Assembly: GCF_000143415.4 (NCBI RefSeq) | Contig: NW_003314261.1 | Location: forward strand, 1,502,117 to 1,566,116 | From: Selaginella moellendorffii | Lineage: Eukaryota; Plantae; Lycopodiophyta | DNA length: 64,000 bases | Reading direction: 5' to 3' | Part shown: positions 12,876-47,046 of the stretch, one piece after another | Layout of the letters: every line of letters starts with the position of its first letter | Position numbering within the stretch: position 1 is the first letter of the stretch | Made by a program: the position numbers and the translations under genes | Notes under the pieces: model-generated | What the model saw: only the letters and a program-made list of their open reading frames with translations | Told to the model about the DNA's origin: nothing | Database searches by the model: none

Positions 12876-12921
12876 TAACTTTCAAAGTTACAGATATACG
12901 GATGGGAAACCAAATTACATT

Positions 12922-22324: not shown

Positions 22325-22440
22325 CATTGGAATTCGTAAACAAAGACGCGATGGTAAGGTGATAATCCTGGATGTCAGCTCCACTATGAAGAAGGCTTAC
22401 ACTGTGATGATTCTTCCATTTGGTTTGATTTTGAGTGAGT

Positions 22441-24294: not shown

Positions 24295-24879
24295 TCAGTA
24301 AATCACAAATTGTTGAGGGCGTGAATAGCTTTGCTGCTGACCATATTGTGACTCAACTACAGTGTTAATAAACTGTGATTGTCCTGGAAGTAAATGTGCA
24401 CCAATCTTAGCTAACTCATCTGCAACTTGATTTCCAGCGATGTCGTAGTGCCCCTTCACCTTACAAAAATGAACTGGAACAAGTGATGTTCCTGCAAGCC
24501 AAACTATCGTCTGGATGATATCTGCATTTGGATGGCGACCCAGGGCTATTGGATCTTGCACATACATCTCCAGCAGCGTCAAGGAGTCATAACTGTCGGT
24601 GTATACAAAGATTGGCTCCCACAATCCCCAGCGCCATTCCATCTCTAAACAGATTTCGAGGGCTCGCATCAAACCCAACAGCTCAAACGTGATAGTGGAG
24701 CTTGTATGTAAGTTGTCGTTTGCCCTTCTTCCACAAGCGAGTCGCATGGAAACTCTCGGGATAAACACTCCATAACCTCCGAAAACCCCACGCTTGAAAG
24801 ATCCATCGGTAAAAGCCTGCAATCCATGATCGCTGGCTACCATTTCCCGCGTACGCACGACCTTGTCCACCTCAAACAT
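24295..24879 (-). CDS. Stand-alone RNase HI-like protein, copy 1 (intronless, 194 aa)
   Basis: AFTDGS, TFELLGL..AL, VYTDS, KVKGH, GNQVADELAK: full D-E-D-H-D catalytic set. TATATAAA ~75 bp upstream; A-rich tract directly after the stop. Confidence 0.88.
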   Translation of the reverse strand: MFEVDKVVRTREMVASDHGLQAFTDGSFKRGVFGGYGVFIPRVSMRLACGRRANDNLHTSSTITFELLGLMRALEICLEMEWRWGLWEPIFVYTDSYDSLTLLEMYVQDPIALGRHPNADIIQTIVWLAGTSLVPVHFCKVKGHYDIAGNQVADELAKIGAHLLPGQSQFINTVVESQYGQQQSYSRPQQFVIY

Positions 24880-24950
24880 ATTTCACTTGCTCACCTTTAA
24901 TGCTCTCTTCCTGTTCTGGAAAGTATACCTAACCCAAAAAGGCAATGGCA

Positions 24951-24962
24951 TTTTATATAAGC
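24951..24962 (-). promoter_or_regulatory. Putative TATA box of the RNase H gene (conserved in all six full copies)
   Basis: Minus strand reads gcTTATATAAAatg, ~75 bp 5' of the ATG. Confidence 0.55.
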
Positions 24963-25356
24963 TATGGAAATAATGCTTTAATTTGGAAATTCGAAGCGTC
25001 GAAGATGATGCACGATCCGATAGACCAACAGCCCTAGAAACCTGCCAATGCGACTTAGAAACTTCATCCTTTCGTCTGGATCGAGCCTGCAATCAGGAAA
25101 GCTGATCACGCTATCGCTCGCTGTTTAGAACTTGAAGAAAAGCCAGAAGGAAAAAGCAGCGTTAGCAGGAGAGATCAGCATGGCAGCCGGGGGCGGCGAT
25201 CTTATACGGCACTCGCTCCTCCCGTCGTTTTCCAACCGCCTCATCCGACGCATGCACGCGCTTACCGATTTATATTCCACGGCTTACATCAAGCAACGCT
25301 GTGCTTTCCTGGAGAAAAACAAGGCCTTCACAAAACCAGAAAAAGATCTTGTCTCC

Positions 25357-27290
25357 CAAAGTTATGCCTGGCGTGTGCCATCCAGCCGAAATGCTTCACG
25401 TCAGCTCACCATCTAGGACGCGGCAGCTAGAAGGTGTCTACTTCTCGACCTCCATGAGTGTTGATTTAGTTCCTGCCAGAAGGTGTTAAAACGATACAAG
25501 CTCGAGAGAAGGGCCCAACCAGGATTGATTTTTCATGCGTCTCGATTCGCCGTGCTACTTCCAGGCACACAGGAGAACCTTGAAGTGGTTTTTGACCCCT
25601 GAGAAGCACAAACAATGTGTCTCTTCAAAGAAAAAGGAATGTGTTTTACAGCGTGTTTCCGCCGAGTTGATCTTCAATTATCGTGTTCATTTCCGGGAAT
25701 TGCGTCAATAGATCAGTCTGCGGTTTGTGAAAAGTGATTCAGCACCACACCTCTTAGCACGCTCATTACCTACCTCGTCATACGGATTTTCAGTGAAGGC
25801 ACAGTGAAGCCATAATCAAGTGCAAGCTCTGCGTTTGAAAGATCACCATAGTTTATCCAAATCTGCGAAGCCGAATGAAACATGAAAACAAAACAAAGAC
25901 CACTGCCTCTACCTGATCGTTTTCAGCATAGTCTCTGTCCGCTGTAACCTGCTTGTGGTACGGAAAAGAAAAAGAAAGAACTTCAGGCGTATCTTACAAC
26001 TGCGTAGTTGAGAAGCCCGTTAAATGAGAGCTTCGCAAAGCTGGTTGCGTTGTGGTTGAAAAAATCGAGCATTGGTATCTGCTAACGCCGCGTTATAATA
26101 ATGTACACAAGGACGTAAACAGAAATAAAGGGAGACATAGCATTACTAATGTTGTCGAGTCCTCTCCAATGGCTAGTGAACGAGAAAAAACTGCAGCAAA
26201 GGCAGGACGAACAAAACTAGCAAGAAACAAGCTTGCTTCCTGTACCTGTGGCGTATACATGCTTCAAGTCTTCAAGAGACACCTTACCGAATAGTTGAGG
26301 CCAAACATCAAGTGCCTGCTCCAGTACACAGGTACAAAAGTCCTTCAAGCATCAAAGTAAAAAATTTCCTCCTTGAATAAAACCATTCGGAAAAGAAAAA
26401 AAACAGTAAGAAAACTAAGTGAATGAAAGCTTGCAAAATAGAAAACTACCCGAAGTACTTACGTTTTGCACTTGGCCAAACTCAGTTGTTATCATTTCCA
26501 GCCGCTCACGAGCCTTGCCGTATAAAGGGCTCGCCCTCAAGTAACTTAGCTCGGTGTCCTCCCAACGAAACTACGCACTTGAAAACTTTGAGAAACAAAA
26601 ACTCGATAGTCCAGTACCGTGTTGTCGAGCTCCGCTGGTTGAGGAAGACACGAGATGTATGGTGCCCATACTGACGAGAAAGATTTAGCAAAGCGAAGAC
26701 GAAAATGTTGAGAGTAAACTTGCCTGGCCTTTGTAGCGTTCCATGAGGACAATAAGAGCAAGTTTGGTCCACGGCTTAACAGTGCTGGGCAAAACCGTGC
26801 TGAGCTGGTCAGGAAGATCGCTAGGAGCTATCATCTGGACGTAAACAAGAACCAACATTATCCCCTGCGCCATAGACTCATCAATGAATCAAAAGGAAAA
26901 AACTAAAAACCGATACTCGACCTGCCCGCCAGATTCTCGCGAAGTCCCAATGCGCACCGCCGATGGATCGCCATCATCGTTCCGGCTCGCGAGCCACGAC
27001 ATAAAACCTGCGTAGCCATTGCTCAGCTTCCGCTGCGCCTGGTTCTGGAATAATCACGCCCAGAACTCGCGAAAGCGATCGATCCACAGTCGATCTGTCA
27101 GCGTACCTGAAGCGCCCAACAGCTCCTCGAGATCGATCCAGCCGCGCCGGGAAGAAGAAGAATCCTGGGCGGCCTACATTTCTCCTCTCCAAAACCAAAA
27201 CATATGTATTGCCACGTCATGGGAAAGCGTCGCTGATGTGGCAGATTCTCGTGCTTGCCACGTATTGAGTGCCTGCCACGTGGCAATCGT
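25357..27290 (-). pseudogene. Inverted full-length copy of the SET gene including its G-box promoter, copy 1
   Basis: Reverse complement of ~15970-18023 with introns retained; ATG followed directly by TAG; the GLFASRP (motif I) exon is deleted. Confidence 0.9.
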
Positions 27291-27299
27291 ATGAGCTAC

Positions 27300-27545
27300 A
27301 AACCCCGTGATTAGCTCCACAACAAACACCCAACACTTCTACCGGAGTTTTGTCATGAAGAGCCTGTGGAAATTGTACCGGAACTGGATCTAGTTGCTCA
27401 TCCTTAAGTCCAGGAATTCCGAGCTGGTAGTCGCGATTCTTTCCCCACGTATATAGTTCCCCACACTCTGAAAGCATATGAGCATTTCTTAAGGCTACTA
27501 ACAAGTGATTGCTGCTGTCCAAGCTGGTCGACAAGCAATGTAAGG
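27300..27545 (-). pseudogene. Inverted fragment of the RCC1/RUG3 3' exons
   Basis: ELYTWGKNRDYQLGIPGLKDEQLDPV...CGANHGVC, reverse complement of ~22020-22278. Recurs at ~34657-34905, ~42015-42262 and ~45951-46192. Confidence 0.88.
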
Positions 27546-27787
27546 AAACTGGGGAAAAAAAACCGCGACGCAGCAAGCTTCCGAGATGAGTTGATGTTGA
27601 ACCATATGGTGTCGTTCTTGCCAAAGTCGGACCTCCTCACCACCTGTGAGTGGGCAAGAACGTACTTGTGTGGCTGCTGCTCTCGGCCGGAGAGTCAATC
27701 TCGATGTTACTGAGCCGCATCCACAACACAGAGCGCAGAGTCTTTGTGTCGAGCAGCATCAAAGTGTTGGGGACGTGACTGCACAGC

Positions 27788-28121
27788 ACCAGTTTCGTAC
27801 AAATGGACGGTTTCCCGACTTTCACTCCACCCAGAGACAAGGTTTGCATTTACAAAGATGGAGATCACAAAAGTACCACTTTTGTTCATGCATTTGTCTC
27901 TTTTTACTTTGGCAGATTCACAGTCATGTATCTCTCCAGGAGGAGCTAGCTTGCTCAAGTCGGTCGATGATCCCAGAACGCTCAACAAGGCTCTTTACGC
28001 TCGCTCGAATGACCGGGAGCACGCTTGAAAAGAGGTGGATGAGCGAGGATGGATTCTTCTACACATCAATGGTGAGAGTTTTCATTTGTGAGGTCTACTG
28101 ATGGGATTGCTTGGTTTTGCA
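27788..28121 (+). pseudogene. Internally deleted IFR-like gene fragment
   Basis: Matches 23094-23492 with deletions and frameshifts. Recurs at ~35147-35480, ~42505-42838 and ~46434-46768. Confidence 0.88.
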
Positions 28122-28288
28122 ATCCCGTCAGTAGACTGGGCTAAGTATTAATTACCAAGGAAGCAGTGTAAACAAGCTTAATGTTGTTACTTTAATGCTT
28201 AAGTAGACTAATATTTAGAAAGTTTTAATCTTCATTTTACAAACAAAATTTGGCTAATGGGTTTTTTTTTTTTTTTTTGCTATTTTTT

Positions 28289-28876
28289 TCAGTAAATTGC
28301 AAATTGTTGAAGGCATGAATAGCTTTGCTGTTGACCATATTGTGACTCAACTACAGTGTTAATAAACTGTGATTGTCCTGGAAGTAAATGTGCACCAATC
28401 TTAGCTAACTCATCCGCAACCTGATTTCCAACGATGTCATAGTGCCCCTTCACCTTACAAAAATGAACTGGAACAAATGATGTTCCTGCAAGCCAAACAA
28501 TCGTCTGGATGATATCTGCATTTGGGTGGTGACCCAGGGCTATTGGATCTTGCACATACATCTCCAGCAGCGTCAAGGAGTCATAACTGTCGGTGTATAC
28601 AAAGACTGGCTCCCACAATCCCCAGTGCCATTCCATCTCCAAACAAATTTCAAGGGCTCGCATCAAACCCAACAGCTCAAACGTGATAGTGGAGGAACTT
28701 GTATGTAAGTTGTCGTTTGCCCTTCTTCCACAAGCGAGTCGCATAGAAACTCTCGAGATAAACACTCCATAACCTCCGAAAACTCTGCGCTTGAAAGATC
28801 CATCAGTAAAAGCTTGTAATCCATGATCGCTAGCTACCATTTCCCACGTACGCATGACCTTGTCCACCTCAAACAT
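28289..28876 (-). CDS. RNase HI-like protein, copy 2 (195 aa)
   Basis: Open ORF, catalytic residues intact, in-frame 3-nt insertion (TSSS). Confidence 0.85.
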   Translation of the reverse strand: MFEVDKVMRTWEMVASDHGLQAFTDGSFKRRVFGGYGVFISRVSMRLACGRRANDNLHTSSSTITFELLGLMRALEICLEMEWHWGLWEPVFVYTDSYDSLTLLEMYVQDPIALGHHPNADIIQTIVWLAGTSFVPVHFCKVKGHYDIVGNQVADELAKIGAHLLPGQSQFINTVVESQYGQQQSYSCLQQFAIY

Positions 28877-29440
28877 ATTTCACTTGCTCGCCTTTAATGC
28901 TCTCTTCCTGTTCTGAAAAGTATACCTAACCCAAAAAGGCAATCGCATTTTATATAAGCTATGGAAATAATGTTTTAATTTGGAAATTCGAAGTGTCCCT
29001 GAGGACGAAGATGATGCACGATCCGATAGACCAACAGCTCTAGAAACCTGCCAATGCGACTTAGAAACTTCATCCTTTCGTCTGGATCGAGCCTGCAATC
29101 AGGAAAGCTGATCACACTATCGCTTGCTGTTTAGAACTTGAAGAAAAGCCAGAAGGAAAAAAGCAGCGTTAGCAGGAGAGATCAGCATGGCAGCCGGGGG
29201 CGGCGATCTTATATGGCAGTCGCTCCTCCTGTCGTTTTCCAACCGCCTCATCCGACGCATGCACGCGCTTACCGATTTATATTCCACGGCTTACACCAAG
29301 CAACGCTGTGCTTTCCTGGAGAAAAACAAGGCCTTCACAAAACCAGAAAAAGATCTTGTCTCCCAAAGTTATGCCTGGCGTGTGCCATCCAGCCGAAATG
29401 CTTCACGCTCTTTAAAACTCTCAGCTCACCATCTAGGACG

Positions 29441-29697
29441 CGTTTTCTTTTTTTCTTGCAAGAAATGCTCATATGCTTTCAGAGAATGGGGATCTATATA
29501 CGTGGGGAAAGAATCGCGACTACCAGCTCGGAATTCCTGGACTTAAGGATGAGCAACTAGATCCCGTTTTGGTACAATTTCCACAGGCTCTTCATGAGAA
29601 AACTCCGGTAGAAGTGTTGGGTGTTTCTTGTGGAGCTAATCACGGGGTTTGTATTGTTTCGAGACCCAAACCAGCTCAGGTAACACAGAGCTTGTAA
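29441..29697 (+). pseudogene. Duplicated last exon of the RCC1/RUG3 gene (start of A unit 2; again at 36786-37042)
   Basis: Near-identical to 22068-22324, lacking upstream exons. Confidence 0.9.
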
Positions 29698-29814
29698 CAT
29701 TGGAATTCGTAAACAAAGACGCGATGGTAAGGTGATAATCCTGGATGTCAGCTCCACTATGAAGAAGGCTTACACTGTGATGATTCTTCCATTTGGTTTT
29801 GATTTTGAGTGAGT

Positions 29815-31037
29815 ATGGAGCCCAAGAGCAGGATTCTGATCGTTGGAGCTACGGGATACATCGGCAAGTACATCGCTACTGCTAGTATTCAATCGGGTCA
29901 TCCAACTAGTATACTAGTTCGTCCACAGGTACTTTCAAGCTATCTATATTTCTTCTTTGATCTCTGGGGTGAGTTTCAGGTGTCAAAACATGTTGATAAA
30001 GTCCGGTTCCTGGTTGGGCTAAGAAAAGCCGGAGCAACGATTTACACCGTACTAGCTATCATCAGTTACTTGGTGTTGGTTCACTTACATTTCTGCTTTT
30101 TGGAAACCAGTGCTTTCTGGAAGACCGAGAGGATCTTGTGCGAATATTACAGCAAGTCGATGTTGTGATCTGCGCTCTTGGGGAAGATCAACTAAAGCTC
30201 CAGTACGATCTCATCAGAGCCGTGAAAGAAGCTGGAAACATCAAGGTGAAGTTTACGGTTTTCAAGTGAATCCCGACTTACACAGTTGTCTTCTCCAGAA
30301 GTTCTACCCCTCCGAGTTTGGGATGGACGCGGATAGGATCTGCAAGGACCAGTCCATTCCCGAGAGCCCCATGTATAGGGACAAGGTAGCTATCCGGAGA
30401 GCCATCGAAGCAGCAGGAATTCCTCATACGTTTTTCATGGCGAACTGTATCATGGGGCTCATGCTCGCCAGTTTCGTACAAATGGACGGTTTCCCGACTT
30501 TCACTCCACCCAGAGACAAGGTTTGCATTTACAAAGATGGAGATCACAAAGGTACCAGTTTTGTTGTTTCTAGATCATGCATTTGTCTCTTTTTACTTTG
30601 GCGGATTCACAGTCATGTATATCTCCGAGGAGGACCTCGCAACTTACTTGCTCAAGTCGGTCGATGATCCCAGAACACTCAACAAGGCTCTTTACGTTCG
30701 CCCTCCCGGAAACGCCTTGACAATGAACGAGCAAGTAGCATTGTGGGAAGAAATGACCGGCAGCACCCTTGAAAAGAGGTGGATGAGTGAGGAGGAGGTT
30801 CTTCTACACATCAACGGTGAGAGCTTTCATTTGCGAGGTCTACTGACGGGATTGTTTGGTTTTGCAGATGCTCAAACTCCATTGCAGCTCAGAGAGGTGT
30901 GGACGCGCATCTATCACGTTTTTTACAATGGAGCTATGTGCTTCGAGTTGGCTCCGGATGATATTGAAGCCACTGCTTTGTATCCTGAGGTAGAGTATAC
31001 TTCTCCACAAGTATATCTCAAGCCTTATGTGTGCTGA
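29815..31037 (+). CDS. Isoflavone reductase-like PIP reductase, copy 2
   Basis: Near-identical to copy 1; splice sites intact. Confidence 0.9.
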
Positions 31038-31668
31038 TTCCTTGATCAACATCCTTGATCAACACGGAGCTTCAACAATGAATACTAACTTGCTCCACGT
31101 ATCAAGCAGAAACGTGCACGGCAATCTTGAAAATGTTCTGGAGGCAAACTCCATAAGTTCAATAATGTTAGTTTTCTTCTCTCAGGAATCCAAAGTGTTT
31201 GGTTACGAAGATCTTATTCACATTTTCACACTTGTTCCTGCACAACCAGCTAGAGGTCTCTTTTGTCACTAAAGTAGTGAGTGAAGGAGGTGTCATTGAG
31301 CAACTTTTCCTTGAGAGTTTTAGGCAGCAAGATGTGTACGTCGACACTGCTGCTTTGATCGATTGATCTGAGCTGGAAAAAGTGCTACAAACGATGGCAG
31401 ACAAGAGAATGCAAGACTGAGCTAATGCACCACCCCGCCACCCAAAATCATTGCCTGGAAACCTCCACAGAGCTGTGCTATAATGCATTGATGCCAGCAT
31501 TGCCCCAGGAAAGTCCAGCTACGTAGAGCTTGTGGTCTAAAATTTAAAAAGCTAAGCATTACTTACCACCAAGGAAGCAATGCTCAAGAAAATTAGCATT
31601 TAGAAAGTTTTAATCTTCATTTTACAAACAAAATTTGGCTAATGGTTTTTTTTTTTGCTTTTTGTTTT

Positions 31669-32253
31669 TCAGTAAATCACAAATTGTTGAGGGCGTGAAT
31701 AGCTTTGCTGCTGACCATATTGTGACTCAACTACAGTGTTAATAAACTGTGATTGTCCTGGAAGTAAATGTGCACCAATCTTAGCTAACTCATCTGCAAC
31801 CTGATTTCCAGCGATGTCGTAATGCCCCTTCACCTTACAAAAATGAACTGGAACAAGTGATGTTCCTGCAAGCCAAACTATCGTCTGGATGATATCTGCA
31901 TTTGGGTGGCGACCCAGGGCTATTGGATCTTGCACATACATCTCCAGCAGTGTCAAGGAGTCATAACTGTCGGTGTATACAAAGACTGGCTCCCACAATC
32001 CCCAGCGCCATTCCATCTCTAAACAGATTTCGAGGGCTCGCATCAAACCCAACAGCTCAAACGTGATAGTGGAGCTTGTATGTAAGTTGTCGTTTGCCCT
32101 TCTTCCACAAGCGAGTCGCATGGAAACTCTCGGGATAAACACTCCATAACCTCCGAAAACCCCGCGTTTGAAGGATCCGTCAGTAAAAGCCTGCAATCCA
32201 TGATCGCTGGCTACCATTTCTTGAGTACGCACGACCTTGTCCACCTCAAACAT
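31669..32253 (-). CDS. RNase HI-like protein, copy 3
   Basis: Open 194-aa ORF, catalytic residues intact. Confidence 0.85.
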   Translation of the reverse strand: MFEVDKVVRTQEMVASDHGLQAFTDGSFKRGVFGGYGVFIPRVSMRLACGRRANDNLHTSSTITFELLGLMRALEICLEMEWRWGLWEPVFVYTDSYDSLTLLEMYVQDPIALGRHPNADIIQTIVWLAGTSLVPVHFCKVKGHYDIAGNQVADELAKIGAHLLPGQSQFINTVVESQYGQQQSYSRPQQFVIY

Positions 32254-32738
32254 ATTTCACTTGCTTGCCTTTAATGCTCTCTTCCTGTTCTGGAAAGTAT
32301 ACCTAACCCAAAAAGGCAATCGCATTTTATATAAGCTATGGAAATAATGCTTTAATTTGGAAATTCGAAGCGTCCCTGAGGACGAAGATGATGCACGTTC
32401 CGATAGACCAACAGCCCTAGAAACCTGCCAATACGACTTAGAAACTTCAACCTTTCGTCTGGATCGAGCCTGCAATCAGGAAAGCTGGTCACGCTATCGC
32501 TCGCTGTTTAGAACTTGAAGAAAAGCCAGAAGGAAAAAGCAGCGTTAGCAGGAGAGATCAGCATGGCAGCCGGGGGCGGCGATCTTATACGGCAGTTGCT
32601 CCTCCCGTCGTTTTCCAACCGCCTCATCCGACGCATGCACGCGCTTACCGATTTATATTCCACGGCTTACACCAAGCAACGCTGTGCTTTCCTGGAGAAA
32701 AACAAGGCCTTCACAAAACCAGAAAAAGATCTTGTCTC

Positions 32739-34648
32739 CCAAAGTTATGCCTGGCATGTGCCATTCAGCCGAAATGCTTCACGCTCTTTAAAACTCTCAG
32801 CTCACCATCTAGGACGCGGCAGCTAGAAGTTGTCTACTTCTCGACCTCCATGAGTGTTGATTTAGTTCCTGCCAGACGGTGTTAGGGCCCAACCAGGATT
32901 GATTTTTCATGCGTCTCGATTCGCCGTGCTACTTCCAGGCACACAGGAGAACCTTGAAGTGGTTTTTGACCCCTGAGAAGCACAAACAATGTGTCTCTTC
33001 AAAGAAAAAGGAATGTGTTTTACAGCGTGTTTCCGCCAAGTTGATCTTTAATTATCGTGTTCATTTCCGGGAATTGCGTCAATAGCTCAGTCTGCGGTTT
33101 GTGAAAAGTGATTCAGCACCACACCTCTTAGCACGCTCATTACCTCGTCATACGGATTTTCAGGCACAGTGAAGCCATAATCAAGTGCAAGCTCTGCGTT
33201 TGAAAGATCACCATAGTTTATCCAAATCTGCGAAGCCGAATGAAACATGAAAACAAAACAAAGACCACTGCCTCTACCTGATCGTTTTCAGCATAGTCTC
33301 TGTCCGCTGTAACCTGCTTGTGGTACGGAAAGGAAAAAGAAAGAACTTCAGGCGTATCTTACAACTGCGTAGTTGAGAAGCCCGTTAAATGAGAGCTTCG
33401 CAAAGCTGGTTGCGTTGTGGTTGAAAAAATCGAGCATTGGTATCTGCTAACGCCGCGTTATAATGTACACAAGGACGTAAACAGAATTAAAGGGAGACAT
33501 ACCATTACTAATGTCGAGTCCTCTCCAATGGCTAGTGAACGAGAAAAAACTGCAGCAAAGGAAGGACGAACAAAACTAGCAAGAAACAAGCTTGCTTCCT
33601 GTACCTGTGGCGTATACATGCTTCAAGTCTTCAAGAGACACTTTACCGAATAGTTGAGGCCAAACATCAAGTGCCTGCTCCAGTACACAGGTACAAAAAT
33701 CCTTCAAGCATCAAAGTAAAAAATTTCCCCCTTGAATAAAACCATTCGGAAAAGAAAAAAACAGTAAAAAAACTAAGTGAATGAAAGCTTGCAAAATAGA
33801 AAACTACCCGAAGTACTTACGTTTTGCACTTGGCCAAACTCAGTTGTTATCATTTCCAGCCGCTCACGAGCCTTGCCGTATAAAGGGCTCGCCCTCAAGT
33901 AACTTAGCTCGGTGTCCTCCCAACGAAACTACGCACTTGAAAACTTTGAGAAACAAAAACTCGATAGTCCAGTACCCGTGTTGTCGAGCTCCGCTGGTTG
34001 AGGAAGACACGAGATGTATGGTGCCCATACTGACGAGAAAGATTTAGCAAAGCGAAGACGAAAATGTTGAGAGTAAACTTGCCTGGCCTTTGTAGCGTTC
34101 CATGAGGACAATAAGAGCAAGTTTGGTCCACGGCTTAACAGTGCTGGGCAAAACCGTGCTGAGCTGGTCAGGAAGATCACTAGGAGCTATCATCTGGACG
34201 TAAACAAGAACCAACATTATCCCCTGCGCCATAGACTCATCAATGAATCAAAAGGAAAAAACTAAAAACCGATACTCGACCTGCCCGCCAGATTCTCGCG
34301 AAGTCCCAATGCGCACCGCCGATGGATCGCCATCATCGTTCCGGCTCGCGAGCCACGACATAAAACCTGCGTAGCAATTGCTCAGCTTCCGCTGCGCCTG
34401 GTTCTGGAATAATCAAGCCCAGAACTCGCGAAAACGATCGATCGACAGTCGATCTGTCAGCGTACCTGAAGCGCCCAACAGCTCCTCGAGATCGATCCAG
34501 CCGCGCCGGGAAGAAGAAGAATCCTGGGCGGCCCACATTTCTCCTCTCCAAAACCAAAACATATGTATTGCCACGTCATGGGAAAGCGTCGCTGATGTGG
34601 CAGATTCTCGTGCTGCCACGTATTGAGTGCCTGCCACGTGGCAGTTGT
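32739..34648 (-). pseudogene. Inverted SET pseudogene, copy 2
   Basis: As copy 1; frameshifting deletion after ATG TGG; motif I exon deleted. Confidence 0.9.
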
Positions 34649-36222: not shown

Positions 36223-37159
36223 ATTTCACTTGCTCGCCTTTAATGCTCTCTTCCTGTTCTGGAAAGTATACCTGACCCAAAAAGGCAATGGCATTTTATA
36301 TAAGCTATGGAAATAATGCTTTAATTTGGAAATTCGAAGCGTCCCTGAGGACGAAGATGATGCACGATCCGATAGACCAACAGCTCTAGAAACCTACCAA
36401 TATGACTTAGAAACTTCATCCTTTCGTCTGGATCGAGCCTGCAATCAGGAAAGCTGATCACGCTATCGCTCGCTGTTTAGAACTTGAAGAAAAGCCAGAA
36501 GGAAAAAGCAGCGTTAGCAGGAGAGATCAGCATGGGAGCCGGGGGTGGCAATCTTATACGGCAGTCGCTCCTCCCGTCGTTTTCCAACCACCTCATCCGA
36601 CGCATGCACGCGCTTACCGATTTATATTCCACGCCTTACATCAAGCAACGCTGTGCTTTCCTGGAGAAAAACAAGGCCTTCACAAAACCAGAAAAAGATC
36701 TTGTCTCCCAAAGTTATGCCTGGCGTGTGCCATCCAGCCGAAATGCTTCACGCTCTTTAAAACTCTCAGCTCACCATCTAGGACGCGTTTTCTTTTTTTC
36801 TTGCAAGAAATGCTCATATGCTTTCAGAGAATGGGGATCTATATACGTGGGGAAAGAATCGCGACTACCAGCTCGGAATTCCTGGACTTAAGGATGAGCA
36901 ACTAGATCCCGTTTTGGTACAATTTCCACAGGCTCTTCATGAGAAAACTCCAGTAGAAGTGTTGGGTGTTTCTTGTGGAGCTAATCACGGGGTTTGTATT
37001 GTTTCGAGACCCAAACCAGCTCAGGTAACACAGAGCTTGTAACATTGGAATTCGTAAACAAAGACGCGATGGTAAGGTGATAATCCTGGATGTCAGCTCC
37101 ACTATGAAGAAGGCTTACACTGTGATGATTCTTCCATTTGGTTTTGATTTTGAGTGAGT

Positions 37160-38382: not shown

Positions 38383-39025
38383 TTCCTTGATCAACATCCT
38401 TGATCAACACGGAGATTCAACAATGAATACTAACTTGCTCCACGTATCAAGCAGAAACGTGCACGGCAATCTTGAAAATTTTCTGGAGGCAAACTCCATA
38501 AGTTCAATAATGTTAGTTTTCTTCTCTCAGGAATCCAAAGTGTTTGGTTACGAAGATCTTATTCACATTTTCACACTTGTTCCTGCACAACCAGCTAGAG
38601 GTCTCTTTTGTCACTAAAGTAGTGAGTGAAGGAGGTGTCATTGAGCAACTTTTCCTTGAGAGTTTTAGGCAGCAAGATGTGTACGTCGACACTGCTGCTT
38701 TGATCGATTGATCTGAGCTGGAAAAAGTGCTACAAACGATGGCAGACAACAGAATGCAAGGCTGAGCTAATACACCACCCCGCCACCCAAAATCATTGCC
38801 TGGAAACCTCGACAGAGCTGTGCTATAATGCATTGATGCCAGCATTGCCCTAGGAAAGTCCAGCTACATTCAAAGGTGGTTAGAGTTTGTGGTTTAAAAT
38901 TTAAAGGGCTAAGCATTAATTACCACCAAGGAAGCAATGCTCAAGAAAATTTACATTTAGAAAGTTTTAATCTTCATTTTACAAACTAAATTTGGCTAAT
39001 GGTTTTTTTTTTTTGCTTTTTTTTT

Positions 39026-39610
39026 TCAGTAAATCGCAAATTGTTGAGGGCATGAATAGCTTTGCTGTTGACCATATTGTGACTCAACTACAGTGTTAAT
39101 AAACTGTGATTGTCCTGGAAGTAAATGTGCACCAATCTTAGCTAACTCATCTGCAACCTGATTTTCAGCGATGTCGTAATGCCCCTTCACCTTACAAAAA
39201 TGAACTGGAACAAGTGATGTTCCTGCAAGCCAAACTATCGTCTGGATGATATCTGCATTTGGGTGGCGACCCAGGGCTATTGGATCTTGCACATACATCT
39301 CCAGCAGCGTCAAGGAGTCATAACTGTCGGTGTATACAAAGATTGGCTCCCACAATCCCCAGCGCCATTCCATCTCCAAGCAGATTTCGAGGGCTCGCAT
39401 CAAACCTAACAACTCAAACGTGATAATGGAGCTTGTATGTAAGTTGTCGTTTGCCCTTCTTCCACAAGCGAGTCGCATGGAAACTCTCGGGATAAACACT
39501 CCATAACCTCCGAAAACTCCGCGTTTGAAGGATCCGTCAGTAAAAGCCTGCAATCCATGATCGCTGGCTACCATTTCTCGCGTACGCACGACTTTGTCCA
39601 CCTCAAACAT
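39026..39610 (-). CDS. RNase HI-like protein, copy 5
   Basis: Open 194-aa ORF; G>E change in the GNQ motif; acidic catalytic residues intact. Confidence 0.83.
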   Translation of the reverse strand: MFEVDKVVRTREMVASDHGLQAFTDGSFKRGVFGGYGVFIPRVSMRLACGRRANDNLHTSSIITFELLGLMRALEICLEMEWRWGLWEPIFVYTDSYDSLTLLEMYVQDPIALGRHPNADIIQTIVWLAGTSLVPVHFCKVKGHYDIAENQVADELAKIGAHLLPGQSQFINTVVESQYGQQQSYSCPQQFAIY

Positions 39611-40086
39611 ATTTCACTTGTTGCTCTCTTCCTGTTCTGGAAAGTATACCTAACCCAAAAAGGCAATGGCATTTTATATAAGCTATGGAAATAATGCTTT
39701 AATTTGGAAATTCGAAGCGTCCCTGAGGACGAAGATGATGCACGATCCGATAGACCAACAGCTCTAGAAACCTGCCAATACGACTTAGAAACTTCATCCT
39801 TTCATCTGGATCGAGCCTGCAATCAGGAAAGCTGATCACACTATCGCTTGCTGTTTAGAACTTGAAGAAAAGTAAGAAGGAAAAAAGCAGCGTTAGCAGG
39901 AGAGATCAGCATGGCAGCCGGGGGCGGCGATCTTATATGGCAGTCGCTCCTCCCGTCGTTTTCCAACCGCCTCATCCGACGCATGCACGCGCTTACCGAT
40001 TTATATTCCACGGCTTACACCAAGCAACGCTGTGCTTTCCTGGAGAAAAACAAGGCCTTCACAAAACCAGAAAAAGATCTTGTCTC

Positions 40087-42005
40087 CCAAAGTTATGCCT
40101 GGCGTGTGCCATCCAGCCGAAATGCTTCACGTCAGCTCACCATCTAGGACGCGGCAGCTAGAAGCTGTCTACTTCTCGACCTCCATGAGTGTTGATTTAG
40201 TTCCTGCCAGACGGTGTTAAAACGATACAAGCTCGAGAGAAGGGCCCAACCAGGATTGATTTTTCATGCGTCTCGATTCGCCGTGCTACTTCCAGGCACA
40301 CAGGAGAACCTTGAAGTGGTTTTTGACCCCTGAGAAGCACAAACAATGTGTCTCTTCAAAGAAAAAGGAATGTGTTTTACAGCGTGTTTCCGCCAAGTTG
40401 ATCTTTAATTATCGTGTTCATTTCCGGGAATTGCGTCAATAGCTCAGTCTGCGGTTTGTGAAAAGTGATTCAGCACCACACCTCTTAGCACGCTCATTAC
40501 CTCGTCATACGGATTTTCAGGCACAGTGAAGCCATAATCAAGTGCAAGCTCTGCGTTTGAAAGATCACCATAGTTTATCCAAATCTGCGAAGCCGAATGA
40601 AACATGAAAACAAAACAAAGACCACTGCCTCTACCTGATCGTTTTCAGCATAGTCTCTGTCCGCTGTAACCTGCTTGTGGTACGGAAAGGAAAAAGAAAG
40701 AACTTCAGGCGTATCTTACAACTGCGTAGTTGAGAAGCCCGTTAAATGAGAGCTTCGCAAAGCTGGTTGCGTTGTGGTTGAAAAAATCGAGCATTGGTAT
40801 CTGCTAACGCCGCGTTATAATGTACACAAGGACGTAAACAGAATTAAAGGGAGACATACCATTACTAATGTCGAGTCCTCTCCAATGGCTAGTGAACGAG
40901 AAAAAACTGCAGCAAAGGAAGGACGAACAAAACTAGCAAGAAACAAGCTTGCTTCCTGTACCTGTGGCGTATACATGCTTCAAGTCTTCAAGAGACACTT
41001 TACCGAATAGTTGAGGCCAAACATCAAGTGCCTGCTCCAGTACACAGGTACAAAAATCCTTCAAGCATCAAAGTAAAAAATTTCCCCCTTGAATAAAACC
41101 ATTCGGAAAAGAAAAAAACAGTAAAAAAACTAAGTGAATGAAAGCTTGCAAAATAGAAAACTACCCGAAGTACTTACGTTTTGCACTTGGCCAAACTCAG
41201 TTGTTATCATTTCCAGCCGCTCACGAGCCTTGCCGTATAAAGGGCTCGCCCTCAAGTAACTTAGCTCGGTGTCCTCCCAACGAAACTACGCACTTGAAAA
41301 CTTTGAGAAACAAAAACTCGATAGTCCAGTACCCGTGTTGTCGAGCTCCGCTGGTTGAGGAAGACACGAGATGTATGGTGCCCATACTGACGAGAAAGAT
41401 TTAGCAAAGCGAAGACGAAAATGTTGAGAGTAAACTTGCCTGGCCTTTGTAGCGTTCCATGAGGACAATAAGAGCAAGTTTGGTCCACGGCTTAACAGTG
41501 CTGGGCAAAACCGTGCTGAGCTGGTCAGGAAGATCGCTAGGAGCTATCATCTGGACGTAAACAAGAACCAACATTATCCCCTGCGCCATAGACTCATCAA
41601 TGAATCAAAAGGAAAAAACTAAAAACCGATACTCGACCTGCCCGCCAGATTCTCGCGAAGTCCCAATGCGCACCGCCGATGGATCGCCATCATCGTTCCG
41701 GCTCGCGAGCCACGACATAAAACCTGCGTAGCCATTGCTCAGCTTCCGCGGCGCCTGGTTCTGGAATAATCAAGCCCAGAACTCGCGAAAGCGATCGATC
41801 GACAGTCGATCTGTCAGCGTACCTGAAGCGCCCAACAGCTCCTCGAGATCGATCCAGCCGCGCCGGGAAGAAGAAGAATCCTGGGCGGCCCACATTTCTC
41901 CTCTCCAAAACCAAAACATATGTATTGCCACGTCATGGGAAAGCGTCGCTGATGTGGCAGATTCTCGTGCTTGCCACGTATTGAGTGCCTGCCACGTGGC
42001 AATCG
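40087..42005 (-). pseudogene. Inverted SET pseudogene, copy 3
   Basis: As copies 1-2. Confidence 0.9.
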
Positions 42006-42996
42006 TATGAGCTACAAACCCCGTGATTAGCTCCACAACAAACACCCAACACTTCTACCGGAGTTTTGTCATGAAGAGCCTGTGGAAATTGTACCGGAAC
42101 TGGATCTAGTTGCTCATCCTTAAGTCCAGGAATTCCGAGCTGGTAGTTGCGATTCTTTCCCCACGTATATAGTTCCCCACACTCTGAAAGCATATGAGCA
42201 TTTCTTAAGGCTACTAACAAGTGATTGCTGCTGTCCAAGCTGGTCCACAAGCAATGTAAGGAAACTGGGGAAAAAAAACTGGGATGCAGCATGCTTCCGA
42301 GATGAGTTGACGTTGAACCATATGGTGTTGTTCTTGCCAAAGTCGGACCTCCTCACCACCTGTGAGTGGGCAAGAACGTACTTGTGTGGCTGCTGCTCTT
42401 GGCCGGAGAGTCGATCTCGATGTTACTGAGCCGCATCCACAACACAGAGCGCAGAGTCTTTGTGTTGAGCAGCATCAAACTGTTGGGGACGTGACTGCAC
42501 AACACCAGTTTCGTACAAATGGACGGTTTCCTGACTTTCACTCCACCCAGAGACAAGGTTTGCATTTACAAAGATGGAGATCACAAAAGTACCACTTTTG
42601 TTCATGCATTTGTCTCTTTTTACTTTGGCAGATTCACAGTCATGTATCTCTCCAGGAGGAGCTAGCTTGCTCAAGTGGGTCGATGATCCCAGAATGCTCA
42701 ACAAGGCTCTTTATGCTCGCTCGAAATGACTGGGAGCACGCTTGAAAAGAGGTGGATGAGCGAGGATGGATTTTTCTACACATCAATGGTGAGAGTTTTC
42801 ATTTGTGAGGTCTACTGATGGGATTGCTTGGTTTTGCAATCCTGTCAGTAGACTGGGCTAAGCATTAATTACCACCAAGGAACAAGCTTAATGTTGTTAC
42901 TTTAATGCTTAAGTAGATTAATATTTAGAAAGTTTTAATCTTCATTTTACAAACAAAATTTGGCTAATGGGTTTTTTCTTTTTTTTGCTATTTTTG

Positions 42997-43581
42997 TCAG
43001 TAAATCGCAAATTGTTGAGGGCGTGAATAGCTTTGCTGTTGACCATATTGTGACTCAACTACAGTGTTAATAAACTGTGATTGTCCTGGAAGTAAATGTG
43101 CACCAATCTTAGCTAACTCATCTGCAACCTGATTTCCAGCAATGTTGTAGTGCCCCTTCACCTTACAAAAATGAACTGGAACAAGTGATGTTCCTGCAAG
43201 CCAAACTATCGTCTGGATGATATCTGCATTTGGGTGGCAACCCAGGGCTATTGGATCTTGCACATACATCTCCAGCAGCGTCAAAGAGTTATAACTGTCC
43301 GTGTATACAAAGACTGGCTCCCACAATCCCCAGCGCCATTCCATCTCCAAACAGATTTCGAGTGCTCGCATCAAACCCAACAGCTCAAACATGATAGTGG
43401 AGCTTGTATGTAAGTTGTCATTTGCCCTTCTTCCACAAGCGAGTCGCATAGAAACTCTCGGGATAAACACTCTATAACCTCCGAAAACTCCGCGCTTGAA
43501 AGATCCATCAGTAAAAGCTTGCAATCCATGATCGCTAGCTACCATTTCCCGCATACGCACGACCTTGTCCACCTCAAACAT
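42997..43581 (-). CDS. RNase HI-like protein, copy 6
   Basis: Open 194-aa ORF with more missense changes (G>R, D>N, R>C); D-E-D-H-D retained. Confidence 0.8.
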   Translation of the reverse strand: MFEVDKVVRMREMVASDHGLQAFTDGSFKRGVFGGYRVFIPRVSMRLACGRRANDNLHTSSTIMFELLGLMRALEICLEMEWRWGLWEPVFVYTDSYNSLTLLEMYVQDPIALGCHPNADIIQTIVWLAGTSLVPVHFCKVKGHYNIAGNQVADELAKIGAHLLPGQSQFINTVVESQYGQQQSYSRPQQFAIY

Positions 43582-44056
43582 ATTTCACTTGCTCGCCTTT
43601 AATGCTCTCTTCCTGTTCTGGAAAGTATACCTAACCCAAAAAGGCAATGGCATTTTATATAAGCTATGGAAATAATGCTTTAATTTGGAAATTTGAAGCG
43701 TCGAAGATGATGCACAATCCAATAGACCAACAGCTCTAGAAACCTACCAATACGACTTAGAAACTTCATCCTTTCGTCTGGATTGAGCCTGCAATCAGGA
43801 AAGCTGATCATGCTATTGCTCGCTGTTTAGAACTTGAAGAAAAGCCAGAAGGAAAAAGCAGCGTTAGCAGGAGAGATCAGCATGGCAGCCGGGGGCGGCG
43901 ATCTTATACGGCACTCGCTCCTCCCGTCGTTTTCCAACCGCCTCATCCGACGCATGCACGCGCTTACCGATTTATATTCCACGGCTTACATCAAGCAACG
44001 CTGTGCTTTCCTGGAGAAAAACAAGGCCTTCACAAAACCAGAAAAAGATCTTGTCT

Positions 44057-45948
44057 CCCAAAGTTATGCCTGGCGTGTGCCATCCAGCCGAAATGCTTCA
44101 CGTCAGCTCACCATCTAGGACGCGGCAGCTAGAAGCTGTCTACTTCTCGACCTCCATGAGTGTTGATTTAGTTCCTGCCAGAAGGTGTTAAAACGATACA
44201 AGCTCGAGAGAAGGGCCCAACCAGGATTGATTTTTCATGCGTCTCGATTCGCCGTGCTACTTCCAGGCACACAGGAGAACCTTGAAGTGGTTTTTGACCC
44301 CTGAGAAGCACAAACAATGTGTCTCTTCAAAGAAAAAGGAATGTGTTTTACAGCGTGTTTCCGCCGAGTTGATCTTCAATTATCGTGTTCATTTCCGGGA
44401 ATTGCGTCAATAGATCAGTCTGCGGTTTGTGAAAAGTGATTCAGCACCACACCTCTTAGCACGCTCATTACCTACCTCGTCATACGGATTTTCAGTGAAG
44501 GCACAGTGAAGCCATAATCAAGTGCAAGCTCTGCGTTTGAAAGATCACCATAGTTTATCCAAATCTGCGAAGCCGAATGAAACATGAAAACAAAACAAAG
44601 ACCACTGCCTCTACCTGATCGTTTTCAGCATAGTCTCTGTCCTCTGTAACCTGCTTGTGGTACGGAAAAGAAAAAGAAAGAACTTCAGGCGTATCTTACA
44701 ACTGCGTAGTTGAGAAGCCCGTTAAATTAGAGCTTCGCAAAGCTGGTTGCGTTGTGGTTGAAAAAATCGAGCATTGGTATCTGCTAACGCCGCGTTATAA
44801 TGTACACAAGGACGTAAACAGAAATAAAGAGAGACATAGCATTACTAATGTCGAGTCCTCTCCAATGGCTAGTGAACGAGAAAAAACTGCAGCAAAGGCA
44901 GGACGAACAAAACTAGCAAGAAACAAGCTTGCTTCCTGTACCTGTGGCGTATACATGCTTCAAGTCTTCAAGAGACACTTTACCGAATAGTTGAGGCCAA
45001 ACATCAAGTGCCTGCTCCAGTACACAGGTACAAAAATCCTTCAAGCATCAAAGTAAAAAATTTCCCCCTTGAATAAAACCATTCGGAAAAGAAAAAAACA
45101 GTAAAAAAACTAAGTGAATGAAAGCTTGCAAAATAGAAAACTACCCGAAGTACTTACGTTTTGCACTTGGCCAAACTCAGTTGTTATCATTTCCAGCCGC
45201 TCACGAGCCTTGCCGTATAAAGGGCTCGCCCTCAAGTAACTTAGCTCGGTGTCCTCCCAACGAAACTACGCACTTGAAAACTTTGAGAAACAAAAACTCG
45301 ATAGTCCAGTACCCGTGTTGTCGAGCTCCGCTGGTTGAGGAAGACACGAGATGTATGGTGCCCATACTGACGAGAAAGATTTAGCAAAGCGAAGACGAAA
45401 ATGTTGAGAGTAAACTTGCCTGGCCTTTGTAGCGTTCCATGAGGACAATAAGAGCAAGTTTGGTCCACGGCTTAACAGTGCTGGGCAAAACCGTGCTGAG
45501 CTGGTCAGGAAGATCACCAGGAGCTATCATCTGGACGTAAACAAGAACCAACATTATCCCCTGCGCCATAGACTCATCAATGAATCAAAAGGAAAAAACT
45601 AAAACCGATACTCGACCTGCCTGCCAGATTCTCGCGAAGTCCCAATGCGCACCGCCGATGGATCGCCATCATCGTTCCGGCTCGCGAGCCACGACATAAA
45701 ACCTGCGTAGCCATTGCTCAGCTTCCGCTGCGCCTGGTTCTGGAATAATCACGCCCAGAACTCGCGAAAGCGATCGATCGACAGTCGATCTGTCAGCGTA
45801 CCTGAAGCGCCCAACACCTCCTCGAGATCGATCCAGCCGCGCCGGGAAGAAGAAGAATCCTTATGTATTGCCACGTCATGGGAAAGCGTCGCGGATGTGG
45901 CAGATTCTCGTGCTTGCCACGTATTGAGTGCCTGCCACGTGACAATCG
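44057..45948 (-). pseudogene. Inverted SET pseudogene, copy 4
   Basis: As above; the ATG region is additionally deleted (~45861). Confidence 0.9.
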
Positions 45949-46932
45949 TACGTGATTAGCTCCACAACAAACACGCAACACTTCTACCGGAGTTTTGTCA
46001 TGAAGAGCCTGTGGAAATTGTACCGGAACTGGATCTAGTTGCTCATCCTTAAGTCCAGGAATTCCGAGCTGGTAGTCGCGATTCTTTCCCCACGTATATA
46101 GTTCCCCACACTCTGAAAGCATATGAGCATTTCTTAAGGCTACTAACAAGTGATTGCTGCTGTCCAAGCTGGTCCACAAGCAATGTAAGGAAACTGGGGA
46201 AAAAAAACCGGGACTCAGCAAGCTTCTGAGATGAGTTGACGTTGAACCATATAGTGTCGTTCTTGCCAAAGTCGGACCTCCTCACCACCTGTGAGTGGGC
46301 GAGAACGTACTTGTGTGGCTGCTGCTCTCGGCCGGAGAGTCGATCTCGATGTTACTGAGCCGCATCCACAACACAGAGTGCAGAGTCTTTGTGTCGAGCA
46401 GCATCAAAGTGTTGGGGACGTGACTGCACAGCACCAGTTTCGTACAAATGGACGGTTTCCCGACTTTCACTCCACCCAGAGACAAGGTTTGCATTTACAA
46501 AGATGGAGATCACAAAAGTACCACTTTTTTTCATGCATTTCTCTCTTTTTACTTTGGGAGATTCACAGTCATGTATCTCTCCAGGAGGAGCTTACTTGCT
46601 CAAGTGGGTCGATGATCCCAGAACGCTCAACAAAGCTCTTTACGCTCGCTCGAAATGACCGGGAGCACGCTTGAAAAGAGGTGGATGAGCGAGGATGGAT
46701 TTTTCTACACATCAATGGTGAGAGTTTTCATTTGTGAGGTCTACTGATGGGATTGCTTGGTTTTGCAATCCCGTCAGTAGACTGGGCTAAGCATTCATTA
46801 CCACCAAGGAAGCAGTGAAAACAAGCTTAATGTTGTTACTTTAATGCTTAAGTAGATTAACATTTAGAAAGTTTTAATCTTCATTTTACAAACAAAATTT
46901 GGCTAATGGTTTTTTTTTTTTTTGCTATTTTT

Positions 46933-47046
46933 TCAGTAAATCACAAATTGTTGAGGGCATGAATAGCTTTGCTGTTGACCATATTGTGACTCAACTACAT
47001 TGTTAATAAACTGTGATTGTCCTGGAAGTAAATGTGCACCAATCTT
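46933..47046 (-). pseudogene. RNase H copy 7, 3' end only, truncated by retroelement sequence
   Basis: KIGAHLLPGQSQF...QFVIY*; similarity ends abruptly at 47046. Confidence 0.9.

What the first reader, a model, noticed from the sequence alone, without database searches (positions are those of the whole stretch)
24295..47046. Amplified stand-alone RNase HI of non-plant type, the common core of every repeat unit
Seen: six open 194-195 aa intronless ORFs plus one truncated copy, one per repeat unit, whichever neighbours (IFR or SET pseudogene) the unit carries. All keep D-E-D-H-D and have an upstream TATATAAA; no RT, hybrid-binding domain or transit peptide is visible. Known: angiosperm RNH1A-C and plant L1/Tat RNase H domains are archaeal-like, whereas KVKGH...GNxxADxLAKxGA is the fungal/metazoan/bacterial and I/Tad-LINE style. 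Inference: a domesticated or horizontally acquired RNase H gene family under copy-number expansion. It sits beside a retroelement nest, so roles in R-loop/RNA:DNA hybrid removal, anti-retroelement defence or a selfish locus are plausible.
Basis: partly seen in the sequence, partly recalled or inferred. Interest (0 to 1): 0.85.

Follow-up and report, generated by a model that had tools for sequence, protein, structure and literature searches.

The report
Tandem stand-alone RNase H genes, spikemoss
A spikemoss (most likely Selaginella moellendorffii) carries six intact, unannotated tandem copies of a small RNase H gene that resembles the RNase H of LINE jumping genes more than the usual plant type; the copies look preserved by selection, yet no transcript of the two copies examined was found.

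Summary
Six open minus-strand ORFs (five of 194 aa, one of 195 aa) and one 37-codon remnant lie in a tandem array at 22018-47046. Each 7.36-kb unit has two halves, and each half carries one RNase H core.

- **Protein:** a type-1 RNase H (Pfam PF00075) with D25-E66-D95-H144-D154 intact. The predicted fold is closest to E. coli RNase HI and human RNase H1. No hybrid-binding domain, RT or endonuclease lies in the units.
- **Relatives:** among 1.84 billion representative proteins, the only close ones are three S. moellendorffii proteins without RT. The window is most likely from that species, so these are paralogues.
- **Origin:** the next-best relatives are RT-linked (LINE) RNase H domains. Cellular and bacterial enzymes score far lower. 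Trees do not resolve the origin, and no donor for horizontal transfer appears.
- **Selection:** substitutions among copies are 81% C>T/G>A. Even so, there are 34 synonymous, 23 non-synonymous and 0 stop changes, against 18.5, 35 and 3.7 expected (P<5e-5).
- **Expression:** in contigs from four studies the neighbouring genes are spliced and present. The two RNase H copies examined are absent except for one trace contig.

Verdict: an amplified member of a family seen so far only in Selaginella, probably domesticated from a LINE, with expression unproven. The scan had already noted this stretch (s1-420336).

The parts
22018..47046 (.). Whole tandem array. About 3.4 units of 7.36 kb, each made of [RNase H core + 'SET'/RCC1-fragment segment] and [RNase H core + IFR-like gene].
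   Evidence: Self-BLAST and repeat families, with spacings of 3994/3380/3969/3388/3971/3936.
24295..24879 (-). RNase H copy R1, 194 aa, intact.
   Evidence: ORF; PF00075 E=4.9e-9.
28289..28876 (-). RNase H copy R2, 195 aa (one extra Ser, in frame). It carries 7 copy-specific non-synonymous changes.
31669..32253 (-). RNase H copy R3, 194 aa, intact.
35638..36222 (-). RNase H copy R4, 194 aa, intact. No contig in the four runs.
39026..39610 (-). RNase H copy R5, 194 aa, intact. The only coverage is one 171-nt contig at depth 2.5 in one run.
42997..43581 (-). RNase H copy R6, 194 aa, intact. It carries 6 copy-specific non-synonymous changes.
46933..47046 (-). Truncated copy R7: the last 37 codons plus the stop. 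Homology ends at 47046, where a gypsy-type RT fragment begins.
32254..32818 (-). Upstream half of the repeated core (example: R3). It holds TATATAAA at 32326-32333. The motif sits at 24952-24959, 28949-28956, 36295-36302, 39673-39680 and 43654-43661 in the other copies.
31639..31671 (-). A-rich tract (about A10, GC, A11-17) that starts in the TGA stop codon (example: R3). It is present in all seven copies. It may be a poly(A) relic.
36827..38521 (+). IFR-like (NmrA family) gene with five exons, head-to-head with R4. It is spliced and present in all four runs. Copies lie about 7.36 and 14.7 kb further left.
   Evidence: Pfam NmrA; GT..AG joints of 51-55 nt; 99% identical copy at 22067-24148.
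40154..41399 (-). Its transcript contig runs down to 39687, seven bases short of R5's TATA motif.
   Evidence: CT..AC joints and contigs. An inverted 92% copy lies at 16085-18023. SET was not confirmed by Pfam.
47047..47400 (-). Gypsy-type RT fragment at the array's right edge, the start of the retroelement nest. A gag ORF lies at 48516-49337 (+).
   Evidence: The RT assignment rests on reading the translation by eye; Retrotrans_gag by Pfam.

Best explanation
The ORFs are tandem paralogues of a small family of stand-alone type-1 RNase H proteins, seen so far only in Selaginella moellendorffii. They are of the His subtype and lack a hybrid-binding domain.

Inferred steps:
- The family most likely began as the C-terminal RNase H domain of a non-LTR (LINE) retrotransposon that became a separate host gene.
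- The protein should cut the RNA strand of RNA:DNA hybrids by two-metal catalysis using D25, E66, D95 and D154, helped by H144.
- With a short, non-basic 'protrusion' and no HBD, it probably binds substrate weakly on its own.
- Expression is probably restricted to a stage or condition, or epigenetically damped.

Shown steps:
- An old two-part unit, in which the RNase H core sits beside either an IFR-like gene or a segment built from inverted pieces of nearby genes, was amplified recently by unequal crossing-over. This gave six full copies.
- Selection has kept the reading frames open. Four copies look constrained, while R2 and R6 may be drifting.
- No transcripts of the two copies examined were found in the available contig sets.
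For: Fold and family:
- PF00075 scores above its cut-off in all copies.
- The AF2 model has pLDDT 87. Its best Foldseek matches are E. coli RNase HI, C. tepidum RNase HI, human RNase H1 and retroviral RNase H, all at probability 1.0.
- A family profile hits human RNase H1 best in the PDB, at E=4e-5.
- The catalytic residues are invariant across the family.

Stand-alone status and lineage restriction:
- An exhaustive phmmer search of 1.84e9 representatives gave only 31 hits at E<=1e-3.
- The top three are S. moellendorffii proteins of 195, 411 and 911 aa, all without RT.
- The 195-aa paralogue is an intronless gene among ordinary host genes.
- Two further profile searches found no other plant homologue.

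LINE affinity:
- R1 is 33% identical, almost without gaps, over 136 aa to the RNase H of an EEP-RT-RNH ORF2 (pairwise E=5e-15). Against E. coli RnhA only 21 aa align.
- The family HMM scores 70-80 bits on a group that includes RT-linked RNase H. HBD-type cellular enzymes score about 40 bits and E. coli 13 bits.
- An A-rich tract starts at the stop codon in every copy.

Selection:
- dN/dS among copies is 0.05-0.40.
- In a test matched for mutation spectrum and CpG context, synonymous/non-synonymous/stop counts were 34/23/0 against 18.5/34.9/3.7 expected. P(syn>=34) is below 5e-5 and P(no stop) is 0.023.
- The ORF has one indel, of 3 bp and in frame. Several indels of 1-13 bp lie in the flanking core.

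Array structure.
Against: - No contig covers R4 in any of the four transcriptome-like runs from four studies. R5 has one 171-nt contig at depth 2.5. Both neighbouring genes are well covered and spliced.
- None of the four products looked up (R1, R3, R4, R5) is on record as a called gene anywhere.
- 81% of substitutions are C>T/G>A and 40% lie at CpG. This is the mark of methylated, possibly silenced, repeats.
- Copy-specific changes are 18 synonymous to 18 non-synonymous, a weaker constraint than in shared changes (16:5).
- The tree leaves the deep origin open. Grouping the family with the E. coli and HBD-type enzymes is not rejected (p-AU 0.18).
- No RT-linked relative from Selaginella itself was available for comparison.
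Confidence: 0.55

Rival explanations
1. The copies are silent relics. A once-functional stand-alone (or LINE-derived) RNase H gene was carried along when the IFR-containing segment was amplified. The copies are now methylated and untranscribed. Their open frames and synonymous excess come from selection before the amplification, from the youth of the duplications, and from gene conversion among the cores.
For: - Contigs are absent over R4 and R5 while the neighbours are covered.
- The copies are unannotated and not on record as genes.
- The mutation spectrum is C>T/G>A and CpG-biased.
- Constraint is much weaker in copy-specific changes than in shared ones, and R2 and R6 look neutral (13 non-synonymous to 9 synonymous).
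- 85 of 210 site pairs fail the four-gamete test, as expected if variants are shuffled by conversion.
Against: - Copy-specific changes still show more synonymous changes than the matched expectation: 18 of 36 against about 12 (from the fractions; binomial P of about 0.02 by my own estimate, not computed by a tool).
- There is no stop and no frameshift in 3.5 kb of ORF, while the flanking core has several indels.
- Contigs show presence, not absence, and only four runs were laid.
Confidence: 0.3
2. The 1.2-kb core is itself part of a mobile or selfish element (for example an unrecognised retroelement, or a captured-gene transposon) whose RNase H serves the element. Selection would then act on the element, not on the host.
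For: - The nearest non-Selaginella relatives include RT-linked RNase H.
- An A-rich tract lies at the 3' end.
- The array abuts a retroelement nest.
- The paralogue P0003 lies beside TE sequence.
Against: - The cores sit at fixed, collinear places in a tandem array, not at dispersed insertion sites.
- No RT, endonuclease, transposase, LTR or TIR was found in the units.
- The paralogue P0001 is a single gene among host genes.
Confidence: 0.1
3. The family was acquired horizontally from a bacterium or a large DNA virus.
For: The gene is intronless and its subtype is unusual for plants. One of the nearest clusters by protein features is a cluster of nucleocytoviricota proteins.
Against: - No hit outside Selaginella exceeds 35-40% identity in 1.84e9 representatives.
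- E. coli RnhA scores 13 bits against the family HMM.
- The paper on giant-virus footprints in S. moellendorffii lists no RNase H (PMC4083422).
- The feature search gives no alignment or E-value.
Confidence: 0.05

Closest known systems
S. moellendorffii SELMODRAFT_409945 / 414436 (P0001/P0032; hypothetical 'RNase H type-1 domain-containing protein', 195 aa)
   Same: Same length, intronless and stand-alone. Same catalytic residues and the same YTDSYDSLTLLEMY and HFCKVKGH..GN.VAD.LAKIGA blocks. A TATA-like motif lies upstream. It forms a clade with the window copies (98/73).
   Different: Only 46-49% identical. It is a single locus (two haplotype alleles) among PPR and pseudouridine-synthase genes, is not amplified, and has no A-rich tract after the stop.
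RNase H domain at the C-terminus of non-LTR (LINE) retrotransposon ORF2 (e.g. P0011, EEP-RT-RNH; the RT-linked P0060 group)
   Same: His subtype. Same spacing between the catalytic Asp and His, with no long basic protrusion. A shared conserved His lies about 28 residues before the catalytic His. It gives the best scores outside Selaginella (33% identity over 136 aa; 70-80 bits).
   Different: The window ORFs have their own ATG with a stop codon two codons upstream, and no RT or endonuclease anywhere in the unit. The tree does not place them firmly with LINEs.
Cellular RNase HI / H1 (E. coli RnhA; human RNASEH1 catalytic domain)
   Same: Same fold and active site. These are the top structural matches (Foldseek probability 1.0, TM by target 0.65-0.74) and the top PDB profile match.
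   Different: No hybrid-binding domain (PF01693). The protrusion is short and non-basic. Sequence similarity is low: 13 bits for E. coli and about 40 bits for HBD-type enzymes.
Plant archaeal-like RNase H (aRNH, Pfam RVT_3): cellular genes and L1/Tat domains
   Same: Type-1 RNase H fold. Often found as stand-alone or retroelement-derived ORFs in plant genomes (PMC4408406).
   Different: aRNH has a conserved Arg where this family has His144. There was no RVT_3 hit at E<=0.01.

Membership tests
Type-1 RNase H (Pfam PF00075) | Profile score above the curated cut-off | tested here: met
   36.9-37.6 bits against a cut-off of 25.8, covering profile positions 5-140 of 141.
Type-1 RNase H (Pfam PF00075) | DEDD catalytic carboxylates in place | tested here: met
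   D25, E66, D95 and D154 are present in all six copies and conserved in the paralogues.
Type-1 RNase H (Pfam PF00075) | RNase H fold | tested here: met
   AF2 pLDDT 87.1, pTM 0.83. 305 PDB matches at E<=1e-3, led by E. coli RNase HI. This is a prediction, not a solved structure.
Type-1 RNase H (Pfam PF00075) | Cleaves the RNA strand of RNA:DNA hybrids | not testable with these tools
   Needs an enzyme assay or complementation.
His-type ('fungi/metazoa-like', fmRNH) subtype as defined in PMC4408406 and PMC5348765 | Conserved His in the active-site loop, where aRNH has Arg | tested here: met
   H144 in KVKGH aligns with E. coli H124 (VKGH). H144 is nearly invariant in the 61-sequence alignment.
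Archaeal-like RNase H (aRNH / RVT_3) of plants | RVT_3 profile match and catalytic Arg | tested here: not met
   No RVT_3 hit at E<=0.01. The position holds His, not Arg.
Canonical eukaryotic RNase H1 | N-terminal hybrid-binding domain (PF01693) joined to the catalytic domain | tested here: not met
   There is no PF01693 hit. Only 20 residues precede the catalytic domain, and a stop lies two codons before the ATG.
Non-LTR retrotransposon ORF2 | RT (and endonuclease) upstream in the same element | tested here: not met
   Pfam found no RT or EEP in the unit ORFs that were scanned. The only RT nearby is a gypsy fragment beyond the array's end.
Non-LTR retrotransposon ORF2 | RNase H sequence nearest to RT-linked RNase H domains | tested here: inconclusive
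   Scores favour it. The tree does not resolve it, and a cellular grouping is not rejected.
Retrocopy / processed gene | Intronless, with a poly(A) relic and target-site duplications | tested here: inconclusive
   Intronless, with an A-rich tract at the stop codon. Target-site duplications cannot be read because the copies are array units.

The most novel reading that the evidence does not exclude
A lycophyte has domesticated a LINE RNase H into a host gene family and is amplifying one member by tandem duplication under purifying selection. Expression would be confined to a stage not sampled so far (for example the germline or gametophyte, or stress). There the enzyme would destroy RNA:DNA intermediates of retroelements, or R-loops. 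That would be a plant counterpart of nuclease-based retroelement restriction.
Probability: 0.15. Interest if true: 0.6.

Novelty: new member of a known kind. Interest (0 to 1): 0.4.

Why it matters
Plant type-1 RNase H genes described so far, apart from LTR-element domains, are reported as the archaeal-like Arg subtype (PMC4408406, PMC5348765). A His-type, LINE-like, stand-alone family kept under selection in a lycophyte would be a clean case of a retrotransposon enzyme domain turned into a host gene. The six-copy array would offer a natural dosage series. It also flags six intact genes missing from the public annotation. The practical value is modest until expression and activity are shown.

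Tried and rejected
- **Horizontal transfer:** no donor-like hit appeared in an exhaustive search of 1.84e9 representatives or in two profile searches. The giant-virus footprint paper for this species lists no RNase H.
- **Orthologue reading of P0001:** dropped once the genome proved most likely to be S. moellendorffii itself. Earlier notes say so, and a TE is 89-92% identical to a S. moellendorffii locus.
- **Simple NG86 dN/dS as proof of selection:** not trusted alone, because of the extreme transition and CpG bias. It was replaced by a spectrum- and context-matched placement test (a first version timed out).
- **First structure model:** with 9 sequences it was poor (pLDDT 53), so it was redone with 61 sequences.
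- **Tree-based origin:** unresolved. AU tests reject neither a single Selaginella clade (p 0.43) nor a grouping with cellular enzymes (p 0.18).
- **Exact-product look-ups** of R1, R3, R4 and R5: nothing on record.
- **Findings search by sequence:** blank, which means nothing.
- **Pfam confirmation of the 'SET' neighbour:** failed, because the exons are too short.
- **Tandem Repeats Finder:** reports nothing because the period exceeds its limit.
- **One paper on AtRNH1C:** held nothing on active-site subtype.
Full report
**What is there.** The ORF scan finds six open minus-strand reading frames at 24295-24879, 28289-28876, 31669-32253, 35638-36222, 39026-39610 and 42997-43581. Five are 194 aa and one is 195 aa. 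A seventh copy keeps only the last 37 codons and the stop (46933-47046). There it is joined to a gypsy-type RT fragment (read from the translation by eye) that opens the retroelement nest. Start-to-start spacings alternate between about 3.99 and 3.38 kb.

**Array structure.** Self-BLAST shows an array from 22018 to 47046 built from a 7.36-kb higher-order unit.
- One half is a 1.2-kb core (ORF plus about 560 bp upstream) next to a segment made of inverted copies of nearby sequence: a 92% match to 16.1-18.0 kb, a 90% match to the end of the RCC1 gene at 22.0-22.3 kb, and a decayed IFR piece.
- The other half is a core next to an intact IFR-like (NmrA) gene.
- To the left of the array lies ordinary gene-dense DNA: lipoyl/E3-binding, CBM48, MFS, two P450s, RRM, Mpp10 and RCC1.

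**The protein.** All copies match Pfam RNase_H PF00075 above its cut-off, and no other family matches at E<=0.01. D25, E66, D95, H144 and D154 are intact in all six copies. With a 61-sequence alignment AlphaFold gives pLDDT 87 and pTM 0.83. Foldseek puts E. coli RNase HI, Chlorobium RNase HI, human RNase H1 and retroviral RNase H at the top. A family profile hits human RNase H1 best among solved structures.

The papers that define the subtypes separate three kinds: His-type 'fungi/metazoa-like' RNase H (cellular fungal and metazoan, bacterial, non-LTR and retroviral), Arg-type archaeal-like RNase H (plant cellular genes, plant L1 and Tat), and LTR RNase H (PMC4408406, PMC5348765). This protein is of the His type. 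It has no hybrid-binding domain, and Pfam found no RT or endonuclease in the unit ORFs that were scanned. A stop codon lies two codons before the ATG.

**Which genome, and who are the relatives.** Earlier follow-up notes on the same genome name Selaginella moellendorffii. A TE at 47.9-50.5 kb is 89-92% identical to a S. moellendorffii locus. I therefore treat the window as that species, or a very close relative.
- An exhaustive phmmer search of 1.84 billion representatives returns only 31 hits at E<=1e-3.
- The top three are all S. moellendorffii: a 195-aa protein (49% identity by phmmer, 46% by BLASTP), a 411-aa protein and a 911-aa protein. None has RT. They are paralogues, not orthologues.
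- The 195-aa one is an intronless gene among PPR and pseudouridine-synthase genes.
- Two profile searches of 5.8 billion proteins found no other plant homologue in the length range seen.
- The window's own products are not on record as called genes.

**Origin.** Outside Selaginella the family resembles RT-linked RNase H most.
- R1 aligns almost without gaps over 136 aa (33% identity) with the RNase H of an endonuclease-RT-RNase H ORF2. Only 21 aa align with E. coli RnhA.
- A family HMM gives 70-80 bits to a group that includes RNase H ORFs lying downstream of RT on repeated metagenomic contigs. HBD-type cellular enzymes get about 40 bits and E. coli 13 bits.
- Every copy has an A-rich tract starting in its stop codon, which may be a poly(A) relic.
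- The maximum-likelihood tree does not settle the matter. The window copies and the 195-aa paralogue form a clade (98/73), but deeper branches are weak.
- AU tests reject neither one Selaginella clade (p 0.43) nor a grouping with cellular enzymes (p 0.18).

A LINE origin is therefore the best-supported inference, not a demonstrated fact. Nothing points to a bacterial or viral donor.

**Selection.** Pairwise dN/dS is 0.05-0.40, with dS of 0.07-0.18. The spectrum is extreme: 46 of 57 events are C>T or G>A, and 23 lie at CpG. I therefore placed the same mutation classes at random on matching bases of the consensus ORF.
- Expected synonymous/non-synonymous/stop counts are 18.5/34.9/3.7. Observed counts are 34/23/0. 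P(syn>=34) is below 5e-5 and P(no stop) is 0.023.
- The ORF holds one in-frame 3-bp indel, while the adjoining core holds several indels of 1-13 bp.
- Changes shared by several copies are 16 synonymous to 5 non-synonymous. Copy-specific ones are 18 to 18.
- 13 of the 18 copy-specific non-synonymous changes sit in R2 and R6.

The family has been under protein-level constraint. Constraint on the youngest changes is weaker, and two copies may be drifting.

**An oddity.** The core differs by 2-5% between 7.36-kb units whose IFR segment differs by 0-0.3%. In addition, 85 of 210 informative site pairs fail the four-gamete test. Three causes are possible and none was resolved: gene conversion among older, diverged cores after a very recent amplification; methylation-driven deamination focused on the most repeated segment; or assembly collapse of the flanks.

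**Expression.** Twenty runs hold part of a 6-kb stretch covering R4, an IFR-like gene, R5 and the start of the next segment. Contigs of four runs from four studies were laid on it. They carry GT..AG joints of 51-55 nt, so they are RNA.
- The IFR-like gene (36827-38521) and the minus-strand gene at 40154-41399 are covered in all four runs.
- R4 has zero depth in all four runs.
- R5 has one 171-nt contig at depth 2.5 in one run.
- A contig of the upstream same-strand gene ends at 39687, seven bases short of R5's TATA motif.

Contigs show presence rather than absence, and only sporophyte-type public runs are likely to be among them (my assumption; the runs' tissues are not on record here). The result is therefore 'no evidence of transcription', not proof of silence. 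The TATATAAA motif is real and unique to these six sites in the window. It is inherited with the core, so it is no independent evidence of a promoter.

**Verdict.** Domestication from a LINE is plausible. Horizontal transfer is unsupported, and independent expression was not found. This is an unannotated, amplified member of a family seen so far only in Selaginella that already has database entries as hypothetical proteins. It is of moderate interest until activity and expression are shown.

Noticed in passing
window 36827-38521 (+); copies at about 22109-23800 and 29450-31150: The IFR-like NmrA-family gene copies in the array are spliced (four introns of 51-55 nt) and present in contigs of four studies. 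They are live genes, not pseudogenes.
   Followed up: partly
window 31524-38881 compared with 24150-31522 and 38881-46240: The RNase H core is 2-5% diverged between units whose co-duplicated IFR segment is 0-0.3% diverged. Substitutions are 81% C>T/G>A, and many site pairs fail the four-gamete test. The cause is unresolved: gene conversion, methylation-driven mutation or assembly collapse.
   Followed up: partly
window 16085-18023 (+) and 32739-34536 (-): The non-IFR segment of the array is an inverted 88-92% copy of sequence at 16-18 kb, plus the end of the RCC1 gene (22018-22280). The array copies of that gene (minus strand) are covered by spliced contigs.
   Followed up: partly
L003:8001-10736 (S. 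moellendorffii GL377661): The paralogue P0003 is an intronless 911-aa ORF. It has an N-terminal RNase H of this family followed by about 650 aa with no Pfam match. It lies next to 8 kb without called genes that holds TE sequence 89-92% identical to window 47.9-50.5 kb.
   Followed up: partly
L002:6001-8788 (S. moellendorffii GL377584): The 411-aa paralogue P0002 (about 190 aa of unknown N-terminus plus RNase H, with introns) sits beside a Terpene_syn_C_2 (terpene synthase) gene.
   Followed up: no
window 10722-14508 (-): A tandem pair of cytochrome P450 genes, each split into two ORFs by an intron. They lie in the gene-dense DNA left of the array.
   Followed up: no
window 47047-64000: Retroelement nest with strong purine/pyrimidine strand skew (GC skew up to +0.28, AT skew down to -0.29). 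It holds a gag ORF at 48516-49337, and few ORFs stay open beyond 51 kb.
   Followed up: no
L005:4116-11496 and L006 (JGI metagenome contigs): A repeated element (found on 19 contigs) with a string of same-strand ORFs including RVT_1 and, 2.3 kb further on, RNase_H. It is probably a degraded or intron-bearing LINE of an unknown eukaryote, and it ranks among the best non-Selaginella matches to this family.
   Followed up: partly
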